This document shows, piece after piece, positions 12,907 through 64,000 of a DNA stretch of 64,000 nt. Each line of letters opens with the position of its first letter. The stretch's first letter is position 1. Position numbers and translations under genes: made by a program. Origin of the DNA: Macrostomum lignano (Eukaryota); the NCBI GenBank assembly GCA_002269645.1, contig NIVC01002183.1, positions 124,001-188,000 on the forward strand, given 5' to 3'. The notes under the pieces are model-generated. The model saw only the letters and a list, made by a program, of their open reading frames with translations. It was not told the DNA's origin and made no database searches.

Positions 12907-13712
12907 TTCGATCGGAATGCATTGAGGTTTGATTTTGTAAATTTAGTGTTAAGAAGGTAAAAACTCCCGTCTCGCTGATGCTTTGGGGAGCCTACATAGT
13001 GTTGCGGAAACAGGCCTCGATCGAAATTTACAGCGTCCCCTCTGCTTGAATTGTTTCGTGTTGTTTACCTATTAGCTGAGCAGTGCTCAAATATGTATAT
13101 ATGCGATAAAAAACTTTATTGTCTGAATTCTCACACATTTCAGGCAAAAAAAGTGTTTATTGTTTTACTGCATTTGTTTTCGCCAAACTGTTCCAGAGTG
13201 CAATTTACTGGTAGTCGAGAATTCGTAGACGTCTGGTACGGACAGGGGCGATAGTTTGGGTGTTAACCCAGCTACTGCTGCCGACTGCACTACTAAACTC
13301 GGCTATTTTTAGAACAACTCTCGTAAAAGCTCGTATTTGTCGAACTTTTTACATATTTTAAATTGCTATTTTAGCCCTAATGTGGGGTTTTACTGACTGA
13401 AATACATTTAGCTGTATCAGGGCTTATTTTGTACCGTAATATCTTTATAGTATATTTTATTTAAAATCGGCAAATTTTAGCATAAAACACTACTATAAGT
13501 AAAAATTCAATGCATTGAAACTTTTTAAAGTAACATTTTGAGAGAGATTTCCGTAACTGCAACGACCTAAGGAATTGGTTGTAGTCAAGGATTCTGAAGG
13601 AAGGATGTCCTACGCTTTATCACCATCGAAGATCAAGAACATGATGGCTGATCTTCAGAGAGCCAAAAGTTATGGTTTTGAGGTCAAGCAGGATATGTAT
13701 AAGATAACAAAT

Positions 13713-13797
13713 AGAGTTGAGGGATGTATTTATTTTAGCACCGAGGGCCGAAGGCCGAAGGCCCGAGGGGTTTAAGAAAAATACATCCCTCAACTCT
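13713..13797. other. Perfect 19-bp inverted repeat around a GAGGGCCGAAGGCC loop, upstream of a Crypton recombinase
   Basis: AGAGTTGAGGGATGTATTT (13713-13731) and AAATACATCCCTCAACTCT (13779-13797). Confidence 0.9.
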
Positions 13798-14090
13798 GTG
13801 TCATCTCACTTAAATCCATATACTAGAAATGAAAATCTTGCTTGTTTGTTTGTACGAAATGCAACCCGCTAATTTATATAACAGCTAGTAAGAAATCTCC
13901 GGGTTGTATTTAACTACAACCCGCAAATTGCCCATAGACATCAATACTGTATTGGGGGTGTGGGCGCGAAGCCATAGACATATTTTATAAAGACAGACAG
14001 ACGACAGATAAATAGCAGGAAAGCCTCACTGAAACAAATTTAACTTCAATTAATTGACTCAAGTTAATTTCACTTTAACTGAAACAAATA

Positions 14091-60340: not shown

Positions 60341-60469
60341 GTGGATCAACGAATAAATAGGATGTAGCTTTTATTTATTATTTATTATTATTATTATTAT
60401 TTAATATTATTATTTTTATTTTTATTTATTATTTATTATTTATTGTCAGTTATTAATTATTAGCAGGCA

Positions 60470-62580
60470 CGGGGTTGTAAACGGCATTACTCGTTCCCAG
60501 AGCTATCCGAGCTCACGGACTCACCTCGGCGTCGATCGCCGGCTGGACGGCGCCTGGGCAGCAGGTGGAAGACGATCTTCCACGCTCCGATGTAGGCAGC
60601 AAAATCGTCCTTCTTGAGGGCGTCTTCCCACTCCGCGGAGAAACCCATGTACAGGGTCTTGCCGGGAGCGCCTTTCGCCGGAACCTCCTTGAAGGCCCGG
60701 ATACCGTCCTGAGGTAGGTCGGGGTTTTTACTGAGGAGCCGGGCGCGTATCTCCTCGATGCTTCTCGAGCCGGAGTAGAAGGCTCGGTAGCGCCTGCAGG
60801 GCGGCGGTGGTCGGGCACGCTCAACGACCATAGGTGGGAGAGCGGTCGCGCAGGTGTCCCAGGAGATGGACACAAGGTTTGCCAGTGCGAGCTCAAGCTG
60901 GGCCTCGTCCTTGAAGGCGAGGATGACGCTGCCGTTGGCGTTTCGAATCGCCTCGACTTTGATATCGAGGGCGTCGTTTTCCCAGAAGAAGTCATCAATT
61001 ACGCCAATCGATGCTTCCATCTGGGCGGTGGTCAGCGTACCGCTAGCCGCGCGCACGCAGATCTTAAATTTCGGCTCCGTCGCCACTTTGACGTACGTGC
61101 CGGCATTGGCCTCCTTTGGCCTCTTGGGGTCCTGCGAGGGGTCGGTGCGCTCGTCTGGCTGCTGCCTTTTTTCGCTCAGGGCCAGCCGAGGTTTTCTCAT
61201 CGCGCCTGCGACGGGTGACGACCTGGAAGCCGTCATTTTGAGCCGCCCCTACAAGTGGAAGTGGAAGTGGACGCACCTGGGCGAGGTGCGGGGGTTTCCG
61301 CGGGGTTCGCGGCAGAATCAACCTCCATGTTGGAGGGTTGGGGGATTGACGGACCCCCGGCCGCGGGAATTGTCCTGGCTGGAATGGAGAAAACTGAAAT
61401 GTAGAAAAAAGCGGGGGTAACCGCTTGGGGACTGGATATACCCCCAGCCAGCTCCGTGGAGCTACCCTCTGTCACGGTAAACAGCAGAGAAGCTTTGGGT
61501 TACCGTCTTATCCCAGGATTGCTCCCAGGCGAGGCTCCGGCAGGCCCCCAGTCCACACTCTGCAAGATCAGGGGGCGGGAGGCCGGCTGCGGGTTTGGAA
61601 CACAGGCGCCAGGTCGGGTTGACAGCCGACGACCGAGCCCTCCCCCACAGGAGCGGCCCTCGAGAACCCGTGTGGTACCAGTTGCAACCATGGGCTGTCG
61701 ATGGGTAGTTGGCGCTTAGCCAGCAGCCAACTACTTAGCAGCCACCTGCCCTGCAAAAAGGCAGCAGGGGGGGAAACCGTCCTCCACCAGCAGACCAAGA
61801 CGAGGAAGCTGGCCGCTTCCACGCCAGGCCAGAGCGAAAAAGGAGGGGGAAAAGCCTCCTCGAAAAGCGAAAAGCTGGCGGATGTCACAGAGTCCCTCGG
61901 TTTAAGTTGCTATTTGCCGCTGAGGGCGAACCTTGCCGGCCAGCCCAATGATGACACTGCCACCAGCAACCAAATAAATAACCCGCCGCCGGCGAACCAA
62001 CCAGTTAACCTGCACATTATTCAGATTAACCTGCACCACGCTCTTGCAGCATCTAGCAACCTTTCAGGCACATTCGCCAACAAGGAAGTTGACATCTACC
62101 TTATTCAGGAACCGTATACCCGCAAGGGGAAGCCGACCTGCCTGCCGCCAGGCTATCAGGTCCTGTACCTCAGGGAGATGTGCATGGCCCTAACCGGCCA
62201 TGGATTCTTCCAGAGACATATCTCGTTGCAAACCGGTTGCCCTCCCACCTGTCCTTTCTGCGCCATAGGAGAGGAGACCGCGGAGCATCATGTCACTTTC
62301 TGCCCTTACTTCAACAAGGCGCGGCACAAATACCTCGGCCACCCCCAGCGGATGGACGAGCTGACCACCCCGGACAATATCCGTGACCTTCGCGCCTTCG
62401 TCCGGGACTCCGGCCGGATGAGGGTCGCCGATGCCTCCACTGTGAACCTGCCGACTACTGGCGGGGACTGGGTGCACCCCCAAGGTTAATCCTTGTGCTC
62501 TTTTACCTTGGGGTTGCGATAGGGGCCTCGCGGCCTATTCGCGGCGCCTGCGCCCTCCGTCAGTAGTAAGTAGTAGTAAG
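60470..62580 (+). mobile_element. Non-LTR retrotransposon insertion: antisense ORF1 plus internally deleted ORF2
   Basis: 16-bp TSD TAATTATTAGCAGGCA (60454-60469, 62581-62596). APE start QINLHH...IYLIQEPY fused to ALTGHG...CPFC...ETAEHH. (AGTAGTAAGT) tail. Confidence 0.88.
60487..61331 (-). CDS. LINE ORF1-like protein (LOA-type, DUF4780-like), antisense to the LINE tail
   Basis: 249-aa ORF 60487-61236 with a basic N-terminus and [30 protein letters not shown]; upstream frame begins MEVDSAANP at 61331. Confidence 0.6.
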
Positions 62581-64000
62581 TAATTATTAGCAGGCAGGTT
62601 AAAATAGTTAGTTAGTCGATCGAGATAAATTTGCTGCGGCACCGGGGTGCCAAATCATAAAAGAAGTTCACTAATTGATAAACTTATTAAGCTTGGTTAT
62701 CAGGCGAAGCAAGATAGATAGCGAGAGCAAACAAAATAAATGTGTGCGAGAATCAGCAAGTTAAACGGAGCAGAGGATAAAAGAAAGGGCAAGGAAGGTA
62801 ACAGAATTAGCTCATGAAAACAGGGGATTAAATAGGGGCAGCGAGCAATTCCGCGGGTGGGAGCAACTGCTGGATGCAACAGTGGGCACCTATGGGCATA
62901 GCATGGACAAAAGAAAAACCGGGAGCATAAGTGCAACTTAACAAAGTTCTGCAAAAAGGATAATAACAGCCAATTCGCATGGAGCACGTGGTGGAACAAT
63001 GCCTGGACAAGCAGAAGCAAACCACACTAGGGATCGCTGCTGGCGGCGGCGGCGCTGCTCAGCGAGGTGCCCACTCGCTGAGCCAGGCTAGCTGTGTTTT
63101 GTTAAATTGGACATCCCGCGTCTTGAGAAATGTGAGTGGTGAATGAGGGCCACTTGACATATTTTTATTTTGTTATTTTTATTTGCATAGCATATTTTTG
63201 CGAATTCCTTCCCCGACATTGTAAACAATGGAAAGACCTAATTAGGCATAGGAGAAAACCATTTTTCTCGTTTTTTCCAAGTCCCAAAGGTTTTTGCTTA
63301 CGAGGTCGCTCAGCCTGAAATTAACGAACATTTCTTGGAAAGGACTTAAAACTGAATAAGAATAAATGATAGATAAAACAAACTCAGTTAAAAATGGAGA
63401 GCTAATCTGCATTATAGAATACGATTCTACAAAAGGAATTATTCAAATCATACGCAATTGTTTTTGCTTCATTAATTCTCGGCGAATTTGCCTAGATTGT
63501 CGCCGAATTTGCTTTCGCCGAATTAGGCCTAGTCGATTATGAATCTCTGTCGCCGAATTTGTTTGTCGCCGAACTGGTCAGCACCCATGCCTAAAACACA
63601 CTGCTAGTTTAACAATGTGTGGGTTTCAGCAAAAAAAGATATTCAGAGTTCAGACAGACACTTAAATTAAAAACAAATTAAAATATATTAGATAAGAATA
63701 TTAGATCTTAATTTTGAAAAGTTTATATTGACAATCTTTTTAAAAATATTCTATTGAAGAACTACTGAATAGGCCTATTTTAACATTGAAAATTGACTAT
63801 TGAAATTCCATTGAAAATCGATTAGTAAACTAGGCCTATTCTACAAATTACCATATCTAATTATAATAATAATTGGTTTGTGTAAGGCCTACTCAGATCT
63901 TAAGGATTAATAAAGGCAAGCCAATGGTTAATAATCAATATCCAATGATACAATTAAGAAGGCAAGGGGCTGCCAAGTAGGGGGAACCTAGAAAAAATCA

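What the first reader, a model, noticed from the sequence alone, without database searches (positions are those of the whole stretch)
13600..64000. 50-kb transposon mosaic with strong single-strand orientation bias (uni-strand piRNA-cluster-like trap)
Seen: of 26 TE pieces with one gene direction, 24 are on + (Crypton, mariner, IS630, maT, P/THAP, piggyBac, Gypsy, Myb, LINE). The exceptions are the recombinase at 38-39.5 kb and the LINE at 43 kb. One-sided binomial p is about 5e-6 if the pieces are independent, which they may not be. Established: DNA transposons normally insert in either orientation, and flamenco-type clusters hold fragments antisense to transcription. The neighbouring host genes run on the minus strand, so a minus-strand transcript would be antisense to nearly all of these TEs. 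Inference: a DNA-transposon-rich piRNA source locus, a giant intron purged of sense insertions, or an orientation-specific recombinase-built array.
Basis: partly seen in the sequence, partly recalled or inferred. Interest (0 to 1): 0.75.

Follow-up and report, generated by a model that had tools for sequence, protein, structure and literature searches.

The report
Strand-biased transposon graveyard in a flatworm
A 50-kb stretch of the flatworm Macrostomum lignano genome is packed with dead and live transposons, about 80% of them on one strand (all 12 in the left 18 kb), which is compatible with a one-strand piRNA source locus, but the sequence alone cannot show that.

Summary
The mosaic is real. 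The window comes from Macrostomum lignano. A scan applied equally to both strands gives 26 orientable TE pieces, 21 on + and 5 on -. The binomial p is about 1e-3 one-sided (2.5e-3 two-sided), not 5e-6.

The bias is uneven. Between 13.7 and 32 kb it is 12:0, built around seven decayed Crypton copies lying head to tail. Between 32 and 64 kb it is 9:5, which is unremarkable.

The neighbouring host gene, a Pins/LGN-type TPR gene, does lie on the minus strand. Its coding start is near 5.99 kb, so the mosaic sits upstream of it and not in a coding intron. Introns in this species average 1.1-1.4 kb.

M. lignano has published unidirectional piRNA clusters (436 clusters, 0.63% of the genome). A minus-strand piRNA source over at least 13.7-32 kb is therefore my leading reading, at about 0.35. 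No small-RNA or transcript data could be consulted. Crypton homing plus chance, and pure chance, remain serious rivals.

By-products: these Cryptons carry short terminal inverted repeats, and the motif CCATAGAC is tenfold over-represented at the ends of unrelated TEs.

The parts
482..5990 (-). Host gene: Pins/LGN (GPSM2)-type TPR protein. Exon at 5706-about 5990 (start MAESPF...) is spliced to exon at 482-about 990. The intron is full of micro- and minisatellites.
   Evidence: Pfam TPR_12 E=6e-12. PDB phmmer versus Pins/GPSM2 E=1e-26, with the alignment continuous across the inferred junction; query residue 40 aligns to Pins residue 49, so the N-terminus lies in this exon. Tandem repeats.
13713..15320 (+). 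Crypton-A copy 1, decayed. Coding similarity spans 14079-15203. A palindrome lies at 13713-13797, and inward-pointing CCATAGA motifs at 13932/13972 (+) and 15314 (-).
   Evidence: Pfam DUF3504 2.5e-27 and QRICH1 3.5e-6. tblastn versus the intact copy 3e-61. Motifs.
15907..18838 (+). Crypton-A copy 2. It is internally deleted (15907-16939) and its C-terminal tail resumes at 18725-18838 after a nested MITE.
   Evidence: QRICH1 4.7e-7. tblastn 4.5e-12. Peptide mapping.
16992..18603 (.). hAT-type non-autonomous TIR element nested in Crypton copy 2. Its orientation is not definable.
   Evidence: 100-bp TIRs at 97-98%. Perfect 8-bp TSD CTCTTGTC.
19675..20515 (+). mariner transposase remnant.
   Evidence: HTH_32 1.3e-4 and Transposase_1 4.9e-4. 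C-terminal motifs.
20706..21021 (+). Crypton-A fragment 3.
   Evidence: DUF3504 1.6e-6. tblastn 8.7e-17. 51-53% aa identity to copies 1 and 8.
21395..21763 (+). Crypton-B fragment 4 (N-terminal half).
   Evidence: tblastn with the minus-strand Crypton ORF 2.9e-5. 61% nt identity to copy 7.
22465..23232 (+). Crypton-B copy 5, internally deleted (N-terminus, catalytic C-terminus and tail).
   Evidence: tblastn 5.8e-6. 74% nt identity to copy 7 in the same orientation, with similarity ending near 23232.
23653..24611 (+). LTR-retrotransposon gag knuckle, protease and RT fragment, truncated inside the RT.
   Evidence: RVT_1 4.5e-5. Motifs mapped.
24636..24801 (+). Crypton-B fragment 6 (catalytic C-terminus), fused in frame to the RT fragment.
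   Evidence: Pairwise blastp to copy 5 C-terminus 1.3e-6.
24973..25209 (+). mariner C-terminal fragment (YSPDLAPADFYVF motif).
   Evidence: Motif identified by eye only; no Pfam hit.
26191..27506 (+). Crypton-B copy 7.
   Evidence: blastn to copy 5 (3e-19) and copy 4 (8e-7) in the same orientation.
27926..28889 (+). Myb/SANT-like ORF remnant of the Harbinger-associated type, split over three frames.
   Evidence: Myb_DNA-bind_5 3.4e-4 at 28168-28260. Mapping.
28889..32045 (+). BEL/Pao LTR retrotransposon, internally deleted to 3.1 kb.
   Evidence: 171-bp LTRs at 96.5%. DUF7041 2.3e-15, RVT_1 1.5e-8, rve 8e-11.
34242..35527 (-). PIF/Harbinger element 1. The transposase is on the minus strand (34647-35527) and the convergent Myb ORF on the plus strand (34242-34484).
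   Evidence: DDE_Tnp_4 2.9e-6 and 1e-4 on minus. Myb_DNA-bind_5 9e-5 on plus. Mapping.
35742..37688 (+). Intact Crypton-A copy 8. ORF 36051-37442 (463 aa) is bounded by a 15-bp inverted repeat ATAAACCATAGATAA, with a 110-bp palindrome just 5' of it (35635-35741).
   Evidence: QRICH1, DUF3504 1e-23 and Phage_integrase 1.6e-9. 666 homologues, best 67%. Inverted repeat. Palindrome 90% identical to Logan contig L001.
37795..39673 (-). Crypton-B copy on the minus strand (ORFs 38064-39562), bounded by 24-bp inverted repeats that contain the CCATAG core.
   Evidence: DUF3504 1e-3. tblastn with P0001 1.6e-8. Inverted repeat I18 at 92%.
40212..43010 (+). mariner/maT-like transposase split by a nested TIR element. 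N-terminal half at 40212-40682, C-terminal part at 42808-43010. The nested element spans 40677-42798 and has 240-bp TIRs.
   Evidence: tblastn to the 19.7-kb mariner 1.4e-6. TIRs at 93-95%. Weak HTH_Tnp_Tc3_2.
43263..44102 (-). LINE ORF2 3' part (RNase H plus C-terminal zinc knuckle).
   Evidence: RNase_H 2.3e-7 and zf-RVT 0.067.
45095..46302 (+). Gypsy-type pol fragment (RNase H and integrase).
   Evidence: RT_RNaseH 1.5e-14, Integrase_H2C2 4.4e-10, rve_3 1e-3.
46922..47588 (+). DDE_3 (IS630/Tc1-superfamily) transposase remnant a.
   Evidence: DDE_3 6.8e-5. About 50% aa identity to remnant b.
47991..48113 (+). piggyBac C-terminal cysteine-rich domain fragment.
   Evidence: zf-Tnp_2 4.7e-5.
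49510..51253 (+). Intact, recently active Tc1/IS630-like element (355-aa ORF at 49733-50800; 29-bp TIRs).
   Evidence: DDE_3 and HTH_Tnp_IS630. TIRs. 99.94% identical over 1744 bp to a copy in M. lignano GCA_002269645.1 NIVC01000269.1.
51703..52409 (+). DDE_3 transposase remnant b.
   Evidence: DDE_3 5e-12.
52896..53348 (+). P-element/THAP9-type transposase C-terminal fragment.
   Evidence: phmmer gave 9 homologues, best 83% and E=9e-49. The homologues carry TNP-like RNaseH/GBD or THAP domains.
54723..55160 (-).
   Evidence: HTH_Tnp_4 8.9e-4. DDE-region motifs mapped.
59762..63586 (.). TIR element with an 8-bp TSD. It encloses a 249-aa repeat ORF on minus (60490-61236), an internally deleted LINE on plus (61701-62489: endonuclease start joined to the ORF2 C-terminus) and one copy of a 370-bp repeat.
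   Evidence: About 85-nt TIRs (I5 and I9). Perfect TSD ATGCCTAA. ORF 91-99% identical to M. lignano UniProt entries. tblastx of the two LINE C-termini 3e-13.

Best explanation
The region is a transposon accumulation zone in the Macrostomum lignano genome. It lies at least 7.6 kb upstream of a minus-strand Pins/LGN-type gene.

My leading reading is that at least the uniformly oriented block at 13.7-32 kb, and possibly more, belongs to a unidirectional piRNA source locus transcribed from the minus strand. On this reading:
- TEs of many classes land there in either orientation.
- Copies whose sense strand is + are antisense in the precursor RNA. They yield antisense piRNAs that load into Macpiwi1 and silence active relatives.
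- Such insertions are preferentially retained, and over time the locus becomes a one-strand archive of old fragments and recent intact copies.

Shown: the mosaic, the 21:5 orientation count, the 12:0 block, the independence and diversity of the insertions, the organism, and the strand of the host gene.

Inferred: minus-strand transcription, piRNA production and selective retention.

The dense head-to-tail Crypton nest probably also reflects Crypton target preference, layered on top of this.
For: (1) Orientation count from a strand-symmetric scan: 21:5 overall, one-sided p=1.2e-3. There is a run of 12 same-strand pieces (p=0.004). Both Cryptons (8:1) and non-Cryptons (13:4, p=0.025) are biased, so a class-independent cause fits better than a Crypton-only one.

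(2) The pieces are independent insertions from at least 10 superfamilies or lineages. Related copies show 45-53% aa identity, which predates insertion.

(3) Old fragments are mixed with very young + copies: a Tc1-like element 99.94% identical to another genomic copy, and an intact Crypton ORF. A trap is expected to hold such a mixture.

(4) The organism is M. lignano. Published for this species: 436 piRNA clusters, median 9.7 kb and maximum 93.7 kb, covering 0.63% of the genome, both uni- and bidirectional; Macpiwi1 piRNAs are predominantly antisense to TEs and enriched for unique mappers (PMC4604429). An 18-kb block fits that size range.

(5) A rough base-rate argument (my inference). Large unidirectional clusters plausibly outnumber TE-dense windows that reach 21:5 by chance, which should be about 0.1-0.25% of such windows.
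Against: - No small-RNA, RNA-seq or TSS data could be consulted. The published cluster list gives only old-assembly coordinates and could not be matched to the window.
- The right 32 kb is 9:5, which is no bias.
- Poly(A) hexamers are equally common on both strands: AATAAA 48 on + and 42 on -.
- In Drosophila flam-like clusters the bias is carried by Gypsy elements and the loci span 0.2-1 Mb (PMC10643416). Here the bias is carried mostly by DNA transposons and Cryptons in a much smaller block.
- Whether M. lignano unidirectional clusters have oriented TEs at all is not documented.
- The statistic is post hoc.
Confidence: 0.35

Rival explanations
1. Crypton homing plus sampling noise. Cryptons, which are tyrosine-recombinase transposons, integrate preferentially at or next to the ends of resident Cryptons and mostly in the same orientation. 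This built a head-to-tail nest. The excess of + among the other TEs (13:4) is chance. No piRNA function is implied.
For: - There are nine Crypton pieces from at least two lineages in 26 kb, and seven in 13.4 kb.
- Neighbouring copies nearly abut. The Cry1-Cry2 gap is about 130 bp beyond the inferred ends, and Cry8 and the minus-strand copy are 107 bp apart.
- Six of seven adjacent Crypton pairs are co-oriented.
- Copies of different lineages share inward-pointing CCATAGA-containing terminal inverted repeats and 5' palindromes. A 70%-identical Crypton in Logan contigs has the same layout.
- Literature: Cryptons insert by site-specific recombination between a terminal motif and a near-identical target (PMC3212892; PMC9977147).
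Against: - It leaves the five non-Crypton pieces inside the 12:0 block, and the 13:4 overall, to chance (p about 0.03-0.05).
- One adjacent Crypton pair (35742-37688 and 37795-39673) is tail to tail.
- The ends are inverted, not direct, which does not by itself dictate orientation.
- Seven identical-protein Crypton copies in another animal genome are solitary, with no Crypton fragment within 10 kb on either side.
- No paper in the searched library describes Cryptons arranged head to tail; the two papers that hold both terms are unrelated.
Confidence: 0.25
2. Pure chance in an ordinary TE graveyard. TE-dense, gene-poor DNA accumulates nested fragments, and a 21:5 split with a run of 12 is simply the tail of the null distribution, noticed after the fact.
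For: - The corrected p is only about 1e-3 to 4e-3.
- More than half of the 764-Mb genome is repetitive (PMC5730564). Thousands of TE-dense 50-kb windows therefore exist, and several should reach this split by chance.
- Half of the region shows no bias (9:5).
- No strand asymmetry was seen in base composition or poly(A) signals.
Against: - Both independent subsets, Crypton and non-Crypton, lean the same way.
- The minus pieces are confined to one half (p=0.03).
- Crypton clustering itself is clearly non-random.
- Base rates of real unidirectional clusters in this species are of the same order as, or higher than, those of chance windows (my inference from PMC4604429).
Confidence: 0.2
3. Another kind of minus-strand transcription unit: a long 5'-UTR intron of the TPR gene, an upstream gene, or a lncRNA. 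Sense-oriented insertions are purged because they bring terminators and splice sites, as in mammalian introns.
For: - The host gene next door is on the minus strand.
- Antisense bias of intronic TEs is well documented (PMC3088655, PMC3517506, PMC1794541).
Against: - The TPR coding sequence starts at about 5.99 kb, so the mosaic is upstream of it.
- No minus-strand host exon was detected in 13.6-64 kb by Pfam or phmmer.
- M. lignano introns average 1.1-1.4 kb and genes 7.5-9.4 kb.
- Intronic bias elsewhere is modest, not 100%, and weak for DNA transposons (my knowledge).
- Minus-strand AATAAA is not depleted.
Confidence: 0.1

Closest known systems
Unidirectional piRNA clusters of Macrostomum lignano (Zhou et al. 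2015, PMC4604429)
   Same: Same species. Both are TE-fragment-rich loci, and the uniformly oriented block of about 18 kb falls within the published size range (median 9.7 kb, maximum 93.7 kb). Orientation would give piRNAs antisense to TEs, as found for Macpiwi1.
   Different: Membership is untested. The published clusters were defined by small-RNA density, not TE orientation. No small-RNA data were available here, and TE orientation within those clusters is not reported.
flamenco and flam-like unistrand clusters of Drosophila (PMC10643416)
   Same: Most TE fragments lie on one strand, and a host gene sits at one border. The trap logic is the same: an antisense insertion gives silencing piRNAs.
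   Different: flam-like loci span 227 kb to about 1 Mb, are enriched in Gypsy-family LTR elements, and their strand bias is driven exclusively by Gypsy. Here the biased block is about 18 kb and is dominated by Cryptons and other DNA transposons, with only three LTR-element fragments.
Antisense orientation bias of TEs in introns (PMC3088655, PMC3517506, PMC1794541)
   Same: TEs are oriented opposite to a neighbouring gene's direction of transcription.
   Different: The mosaic is upstream of the gene's coding start, not inside a demonstrated intron. The bias in the left block is complete rather than modest, and it affects DNA transposons.
Crypton tyrosine-recombinase transposons (Goodwin 2003; Kojima & Jurka 2011, PMC3212892; active CryptonF-1_cRei, PMC9977147)
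   Same: The ORFs carry the QRICH1-type N-domain, DUF3504 and the Phage_integrase catalytic domain, with hundreds of animal homologues. Site-specific insertion could explain the clustering.
   Different: Cryptons are described as lacking TIRs and having 4-6-bp terminal direct repeats. Two copies here are bounded by 15-bp and 24-bp inverted repeats, and a palindrome sits 5' of the type-A copies. No Crypton nests were seen in the one other genome sampled.

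Membership tests
Uni-strand (flamenco-type / unidirectional) piRNA cluster | Dense, uniquely mapping piRNA-sized (here 28-32 nt), 1U-biased small RNAs | not testable with these tools
   No small-RNA data were accessible. The supplement of PMC4604429 lists clusters only by old-assembly coordinates.
Uni-strand (flamenco-type / unidirectional) piRNA cluster | piRNAs and a long precursor transcript from one genomic strand, with a promoter at one end | not testable with these tools
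   No RNA-seq or TSS data. The promoter scanner on hand is bacterial. The poly(A) hexamer count shows no strand asymmetry: 48 versus 42.
Uni-strand (flamenco-type / unidirectional) piRNA cluster | High density of diverse TE fragments, old and young | tested here: met
   26 orientable pieces plus 3 TIR elements in 50 kb, from at least 10 superfamilies or lineages. Two elements are intact.
Uni-strand (flamenco-type / unidirectional) piRNA cluster | Most TEs on one strand, antisense to cluster transcription | tested here: inconclusive
   21:5 overall (81%). 12:0 in 13.7-32 kb but 9:5 in 32-64 kb. p about 1e-3 to 4e-3, post hoc. The direction of transcription is unknown.
Crypton (YR DNA transposon) | Tyrosine-recombinase ORF with the animal-Crypton domain set (DUF3504 plus Phage_integrase catalytic region) | tested here: met
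   ORF 36051-37442: DUF3504 1e-23, Phage_integrase 1.6e-9, QRICH1 3.9e-7. 666 homologues. Fragments.
Crypton (YR DNA transposon) | No TIRs or LTRs; short (4-6 bp) terminal direct repeats | tested here: inconclusive
   True termini could not be defined from multiple copies. Instead, a 15-bp perfect inverted repeat flanks copy 8 and a 24-bp one (92%) flanks the minus-strand copy. No reverse transcriptase is associated, so DIRS/Ngaro is unlikely.
Intronic antisense-biased TE accumulation | The region lies within an intron of a gene transcribed opposite to the TEs | tested here: not met
   The only host gene seen starts its coding sequence at about 5.99 kb, downstream on the minus strand of the mosaic. 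No minus-strand host exons lie in 13.6-64 kb. A 5'-UTR intron cannot be excluded.
Recombinase-built head-to-tail array (tandem accretion at an att-like site) | Adjacent units co-oriented and joined at a shared, asymmetric recombination site | tested here: inconclusive
   6 of 7 adjacent Crypton pairs are co-oriented and nearly abutting, with a shared CCATAGA-containing end motif. However, the ends are inverted, one pair is tail to tail, and other TEs are interspersed.

The most novel reading that the evidence does not exclude
A flatworm unidirectional piRNA trap whose archive is dominated by DNA transposons, especially Cryptons, rather than retroviral elements. These Cryptons carry short terminal inverted repeats, and unrelated TE families (Crypton ends, BEL LTRs, hAT-like and other TIRs, Myb-ORF upstream regions) share one cis-motif, TTTnnRCCATAGACAA. 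The motif might act as a common promoter or recombinase-recognition element and as a homing target.
Probability: 0.2. Interest if true: 0.6.

Novelty: new member of a known kind. Interest (0 to 1): 0.4.

Why it matters
If small-RNA data confirm it, this would be a well-dissected unidirectional piRNA cluster outside arthropods and vertebrates. Its strand bias would be carried by DNA transposons and Cryptons, whereas in Drosophila flam-like loci only Gypsy elements are oriented. M. lignano expresses PIWI proteins in somatic stem cells as well as in the germline, and it has working transgenesis, so cluster function could be tested there.

Two by-products are cheap to test genome-wide and bear on how tyrosine-recombinase transposons choose targets and how TEs borrow host cis-elements:
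- Cryptons bounded by inverted repeats and nested together;
- a motif over-represented tenfold and shared by unrelated TEs.

If the locus makes no piRNAs, the finding is an ordinary TE graveyard with a tail-of-distribution orientation split.

Tried and rejected
- Searching the host TPR exon in the 5.8-billion-protein index returned nothing, because low-complexity words swamped the prefilter. PDB phmmer solved this instead.
- Exact-protein look-ups to locate the window failed for five ORFs: the intact Crypton, the minus-strand Crypton, the LINE at 43 kb, and the ORF at 60.5 kb. Only the Tc1-like ORF was found, and at a different locus. The window's own record is therefore not in the collection, so neither its flanks nor a homeologous copy could be examined.
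- Rfam and ARAGORN found no RNA genes or tRNA-derived heads. The 370-bp direct repeat at 58649-59002 and 59994-60340 stays unclassified.
- A poly(A)-signal and base-composition strand-asymmetry test for minus-strand read-through showed no asymmetry.
- Recent segmental or tandem duplication was tested as the source of co-orientation and rejected. Self-blastn and self-tblastx show only LTR, TIR and deep protein-level similarity.
- The idea that large minus-strand ORFs hide missed TEs was rejected. Six of seven unannotated ORFs have no homologue among 1.8 billion proteins. The seventh is the + strand P-element fragment.
- General Crypton nesting is not supported by seven loci of another genome.
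- The piRNA cluster tables of Zhou et al. could not be mapped to the window.
- No paper links the CCATAGAC motif to Macrostomum, and no promoter sequences are held in the supplement of the genome paper.
- A control distribution of TE orientation in other M. lignano windows could not be built with the data reachable here.

Full report
**Organism and setting**

The 249-aa minus-strand ORF at 60490-61236 matches three UniProt entries of Macrostomum lignano at 91-99% identity. The intact Tc1/IS630-like ORF at 49733-50800 is encoded, residue for residue, on contig NIVC01000269.1 of the M. lignano assembly GCA_002269645.1. That locus shares only the 1744-bp element with the window, at 99.94% identity. 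The window is therefore M. lignano DNA, although its own record is not in the searchable collections.

The left 13 kb is dominated by micro- and minisatellites. It contains a minus-strand gene for a Pins/LGN-type TPR protein:
- Pfam TPR_12, E=6e-12.
- A conceptual splice of exon 5706-about 5990 to exon 482-about 990 aligns to Drosophila Pins and human GPSM2 at E=1e-26 to 1e-22, without a break at the junction.
- Query residue 40 aligns opposite Pins residue 49, so the coding start (MAESPF...) lies in the upstream exon at about 5.99 kb.

The TE mosaic lies at least 7.6 kb upstream of that gene's coding start.

I translated all six frames and kept every stop-to-stop ORF of at least 60 aa, and then of 41-59 aa. 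I joined them per strand in genomic order and scanned both strands identically against Pfam.

I supplemented this with five further analyses:
- self-blastn, self-tblastx and inverted-repeat searches;
- tblastn with the two long Crypton ORFs and a database homologue;
- peptide mapping;
- pairwise tests;
- a phmmer search of the seven largest unannotated ORFs, four on + and three on -, against 1.8 billion proteins.

Only one of those seven ORFs has homologues. It is the + strand ORF at 52896-53348, whose relatives carry P-element/THAP9 domains. The large minus-strand ORFs are therefore not missed genes.

**Result**

There are 26 orientable pieces.

On the + strand (21):
- eight Crypton copies: 14079-15203, 15907-16939 (+18725-18838), 20706-21021, 21395-21763, 22465-23232, 24636-24801, 26191-27506, and the intact 36051-37442;
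- a mariner at 19675-20515 and a mariner C-terminal fragment at 24973-25209, the latter identified by eye only;
- an LTR-element gag-PR-RT fragment at 23653-24611;
- a Myb/SANT remnant at 27926-28889;
- a BEL/Pao element with 96.5%-identical LTRs at 28889-32045;
- a maT/mariner-like transposase split by a nested TIR element, at 40212-40682 and 42808-43010;
- a Gypsy-type RNase H-integrase fragment at 45095-46302;
- two DDE_3 remnants at 46922-47588 and 51703-52409;
- a piggyBac C-terminal fragment at 47991-48113;
- the intact Tc1-like element at 49510-51253;
- the P-element fragment at 52896-53348;
- an internally deleted LINE at 61701-62489.

On the - strand (5):
- two PIF/Harbinger transposases at 34647-35527 (DDE_Tnp_4 2.9e-6 and 1e-4) and 54723-55160 (HTH_Tnp_4 8.9e-4);
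- the repeat ORF at 60490-61236.

The Myb ORF at 34242-34484 (+) converges on the first Harbinger transposase and belongs to the same element, so I did not count it.

Three TIR elements have no definable orientation:
- 16992-18603, with 8-bp TSD CTCTTGTC;
- 40677-42798;
- 59762-63586, with 8-bp TSD ATGCCTAA.

**Statistics**

- 21:5 gives one-sided p=1.2e-3 and two-sided 2.5e-3.
- Independence largely holds. Related copies are 45-53% identical in protein or 60-74% in DNA. One decayed copy, Cry1, still gives a DUF3504 match at 2.5e-27, so that divergence predates insertion and recent duplication is excluded.
- The bias is not uniform. The first 12 pieces (13.7-32 kb) are all on +. The remaining 14 (32-64 kb) are 9:5 (p=0.42).
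- All five minus pieces fall among the last 14 (p=0.03).
- A same-strand run of 12 or more in 26 fair flips has p=0.004.
- Cryptons (8:1, p=0.02) and non-Cryptons (13:4, p=0.025) lean the same way.

These are post hoc numbers. More than half of the 764-Mb genome is repetitive (PMC5730564), so a handful of windows should reach such a split by chance.

**What could cause the bias**

*Giant intron.* This is unlikely:
- the only host coding sequence starts downstream of the mosaic;
- no minus-strand host exon was found inside the mosaic;
- introns in this species average 1.1-1.4 kb.

*Recombinase-built array.* The Cryptons are clearly clustered, with nine pieces in 26 kb and neighbours nearly abutting, and six of seven adjacent pairs are co-oriented. 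Copies of different lineages share end features:
- Copy 8 is bounded by a perfect 15-bp inverted repeat, ATAAACCATAGATAA (35742-35756 and 37674-37688).
- The minus-strand copy is bounded by 24-bp inverted repeats with the same CCATAG core (37795-37818 and 39650-39673).
- A palindrome sits 5' of the type-A copies.
- The palindrome and motif layout recur in Logan contigs of a 70%-identical Crypton.

Published work shows Cryptons insert by recombination between a terminal motif and a matching target (PMC3212892, PMC9977147). Homing to resident copies is therefore plausible.

Several points count against this as the whole explanation:
- The ends are inverted.
- One adjacent pair is tail to tail.
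- The non-Crypton pieces in the same block are also all on +.
- Seven Crypton loci in another animal genome are solitary.

Homing may explain the nest, but it does not explain the whole bias.

*Unidirectional piRNA cluster.* M. lignano has 436 piRNA clusters, median 9.7 kb and maximum 93.7 kb, covering 0.63% of the genome, both uni- and bidirectional. Macpiwi1-bound piRNAs are mostly antisense to TEs (PMC4604429). An 18-kb block of diverse, co-oriented, old and young TE copies fits this picture, and a class-independent cause fits the data better than a Crypton-only one.

On rough base rates (my inference), real large unidirectional clusters are at least as frequent as chance windows with this split. 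I therefore rank the explanations as follows:
- minus-strand piRNA source locus, about 0.35;
- Crypton homing plus noise, about 0.25;
- pure chance, about 0.2;
- another minus-strand transcription unit, about 0.1.

No sequence-level test separated them. Poly(A) hexamers and base composition are strand-symmetric, and the published cluster tables cannot be mapped to the window.

**Comparison with known systems**

The closest systems are the species' own unidirectional clusters and Drosophila flam-like loci. The latter span 0.2-1 Mb, are Gypsy-rich, and have their strand bias carried only by Gypsy (PMC10643416). Here the biased block is small and dominated by DNA transposons.

Membership in the piRNA-cluster class rests on small RNAs and cannot be tested here. 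TE density is met, and the orientation criterion is inconclusive.

The Crypton ORFs are bona fide family members by domain content. The inverted-repeat ends depart from the textbook description of Cryptons.

**A by-product worth recording**

CCATAGA(C) is the most over-represented 7-mer in 13.3-64 kb. It occurs 46-47 times on both strands against 4.6 expected, and 51 times against 8.4 expected in the whole window. The extended consensus is TTTnnRCCATAGACAA, and the flanks are otherwise unconserved.

It lies:
- at Crypton ends, pointing inward;
- in both BEL LTRs;
- in the TIRs of two other elements;
- 30-300 bp upstream of several TE ORFs.

It is not enriched around Cryptons of another genome, and no paper in the library links it to Macrostomum. 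It may be a promoter or TF site shared by TEs, or a recombinase recognition or target element.

**Verdict**

If the piRNA reading holds, the locus is a new member of a known kind.

Noticed in passing
window 13300-64000 (e.g. 13932, 21249, 22331, 25969, 27898, 28918, 31904, 35747 on +; 15314, 23428, 27652, 37683, 39655 on -): The 7-mer CCATAGA(C) is the most over-represented 7-mer in the TE mosaic: about 47 occurrences against 4.6 expected. It is on both strands, with consensus TTTnnRCCATAGACAA and unconserved flanks. It sits at Crypton ends pointing inward, in both BEL LTRs, in the TIRs of two other elements, and 30-300 bp upstream of several TE ORFs. It is not enriched around Cryptons of another genome. 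Its function is unknown; it could be a promoter/TF site or a recombinase site.
   Followed up: partly
window 35742-35756 / 37674-37688; 37795-37818 / 39650-39673; palindromes 13713-13797, 15454-15569, 15731-15875, 35635-35741: Two Crypton copies of different lineages are bounded by short inverted repeats (15 bp perfect; 24 bp at 92%) that share a CCATAG core. Type-A copies have a 50-150-bp palindrome just 5' of them. The palindrome next to copy 8 is 90% identical to the 5' end of Logan contig L001, which carries a Crypton only 70% identical in its ORF. Cryptons are normally described as lacking TIRs.
   Followed up: partly
window 49510-51253; L005 9778-11521: The Tc1/IS630-like element (intact 355-aa ORF, 29-bp TIRs) is 99.94% identical to a copy in a gene-rich locus of the M. 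lignano assembly GCA_002269645.1. This points to very recent or ongoing activity.
   Followed up: yes
window 59762-63586: A 3.8-kb unit with about 85-nt TIRs and a perfect 8-bp TSD (ATGCCTAA) encloses fragments on opposite strands: a 249-aa repeat ORF of unknown class and an internally deleted LINE. It also holds one copy of a 370-bp repeat whose other copy lies outside it, at 58649-59002. This may be a hAT- or P-type element that captured or was invaded by other TEs.
   Followed up: partly
window 24306-24797: A single open frame runs from a Gypsy-type RT fragment straight into a Crypton catalytic C-terminus, with the junction near 24611-24636. This is probably a deletion or nesting junction that happens to stay in frame, not a DIRS/Ngaro-type element.
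   Followed up: partly
window 1-13600: The host-gene intron and upstream region are extraordinarily rich in tandem repeats: (TGTC)n 543 bp, (TCTCC)n 314 bp, a 10-mer repeated 145 times (1.4 kb), and 16-, 20-, 21- and 22-mer arrays. GC skew reaches -0.66. A Ser-rich 200-aa minus-strand ORF at 10222-10824 has no identified homologue.
   Followed up: no
window 34242-35527: In this Harbinger the Myb-like ORF (+) and the transposase (-) converge tail to tail. 'Orientation' of Harbinger-family pieces is therefore ambiguous, and Myb-only fragments such as 27926-28889 are weak evidence for strand counts.
   Followed up: yes
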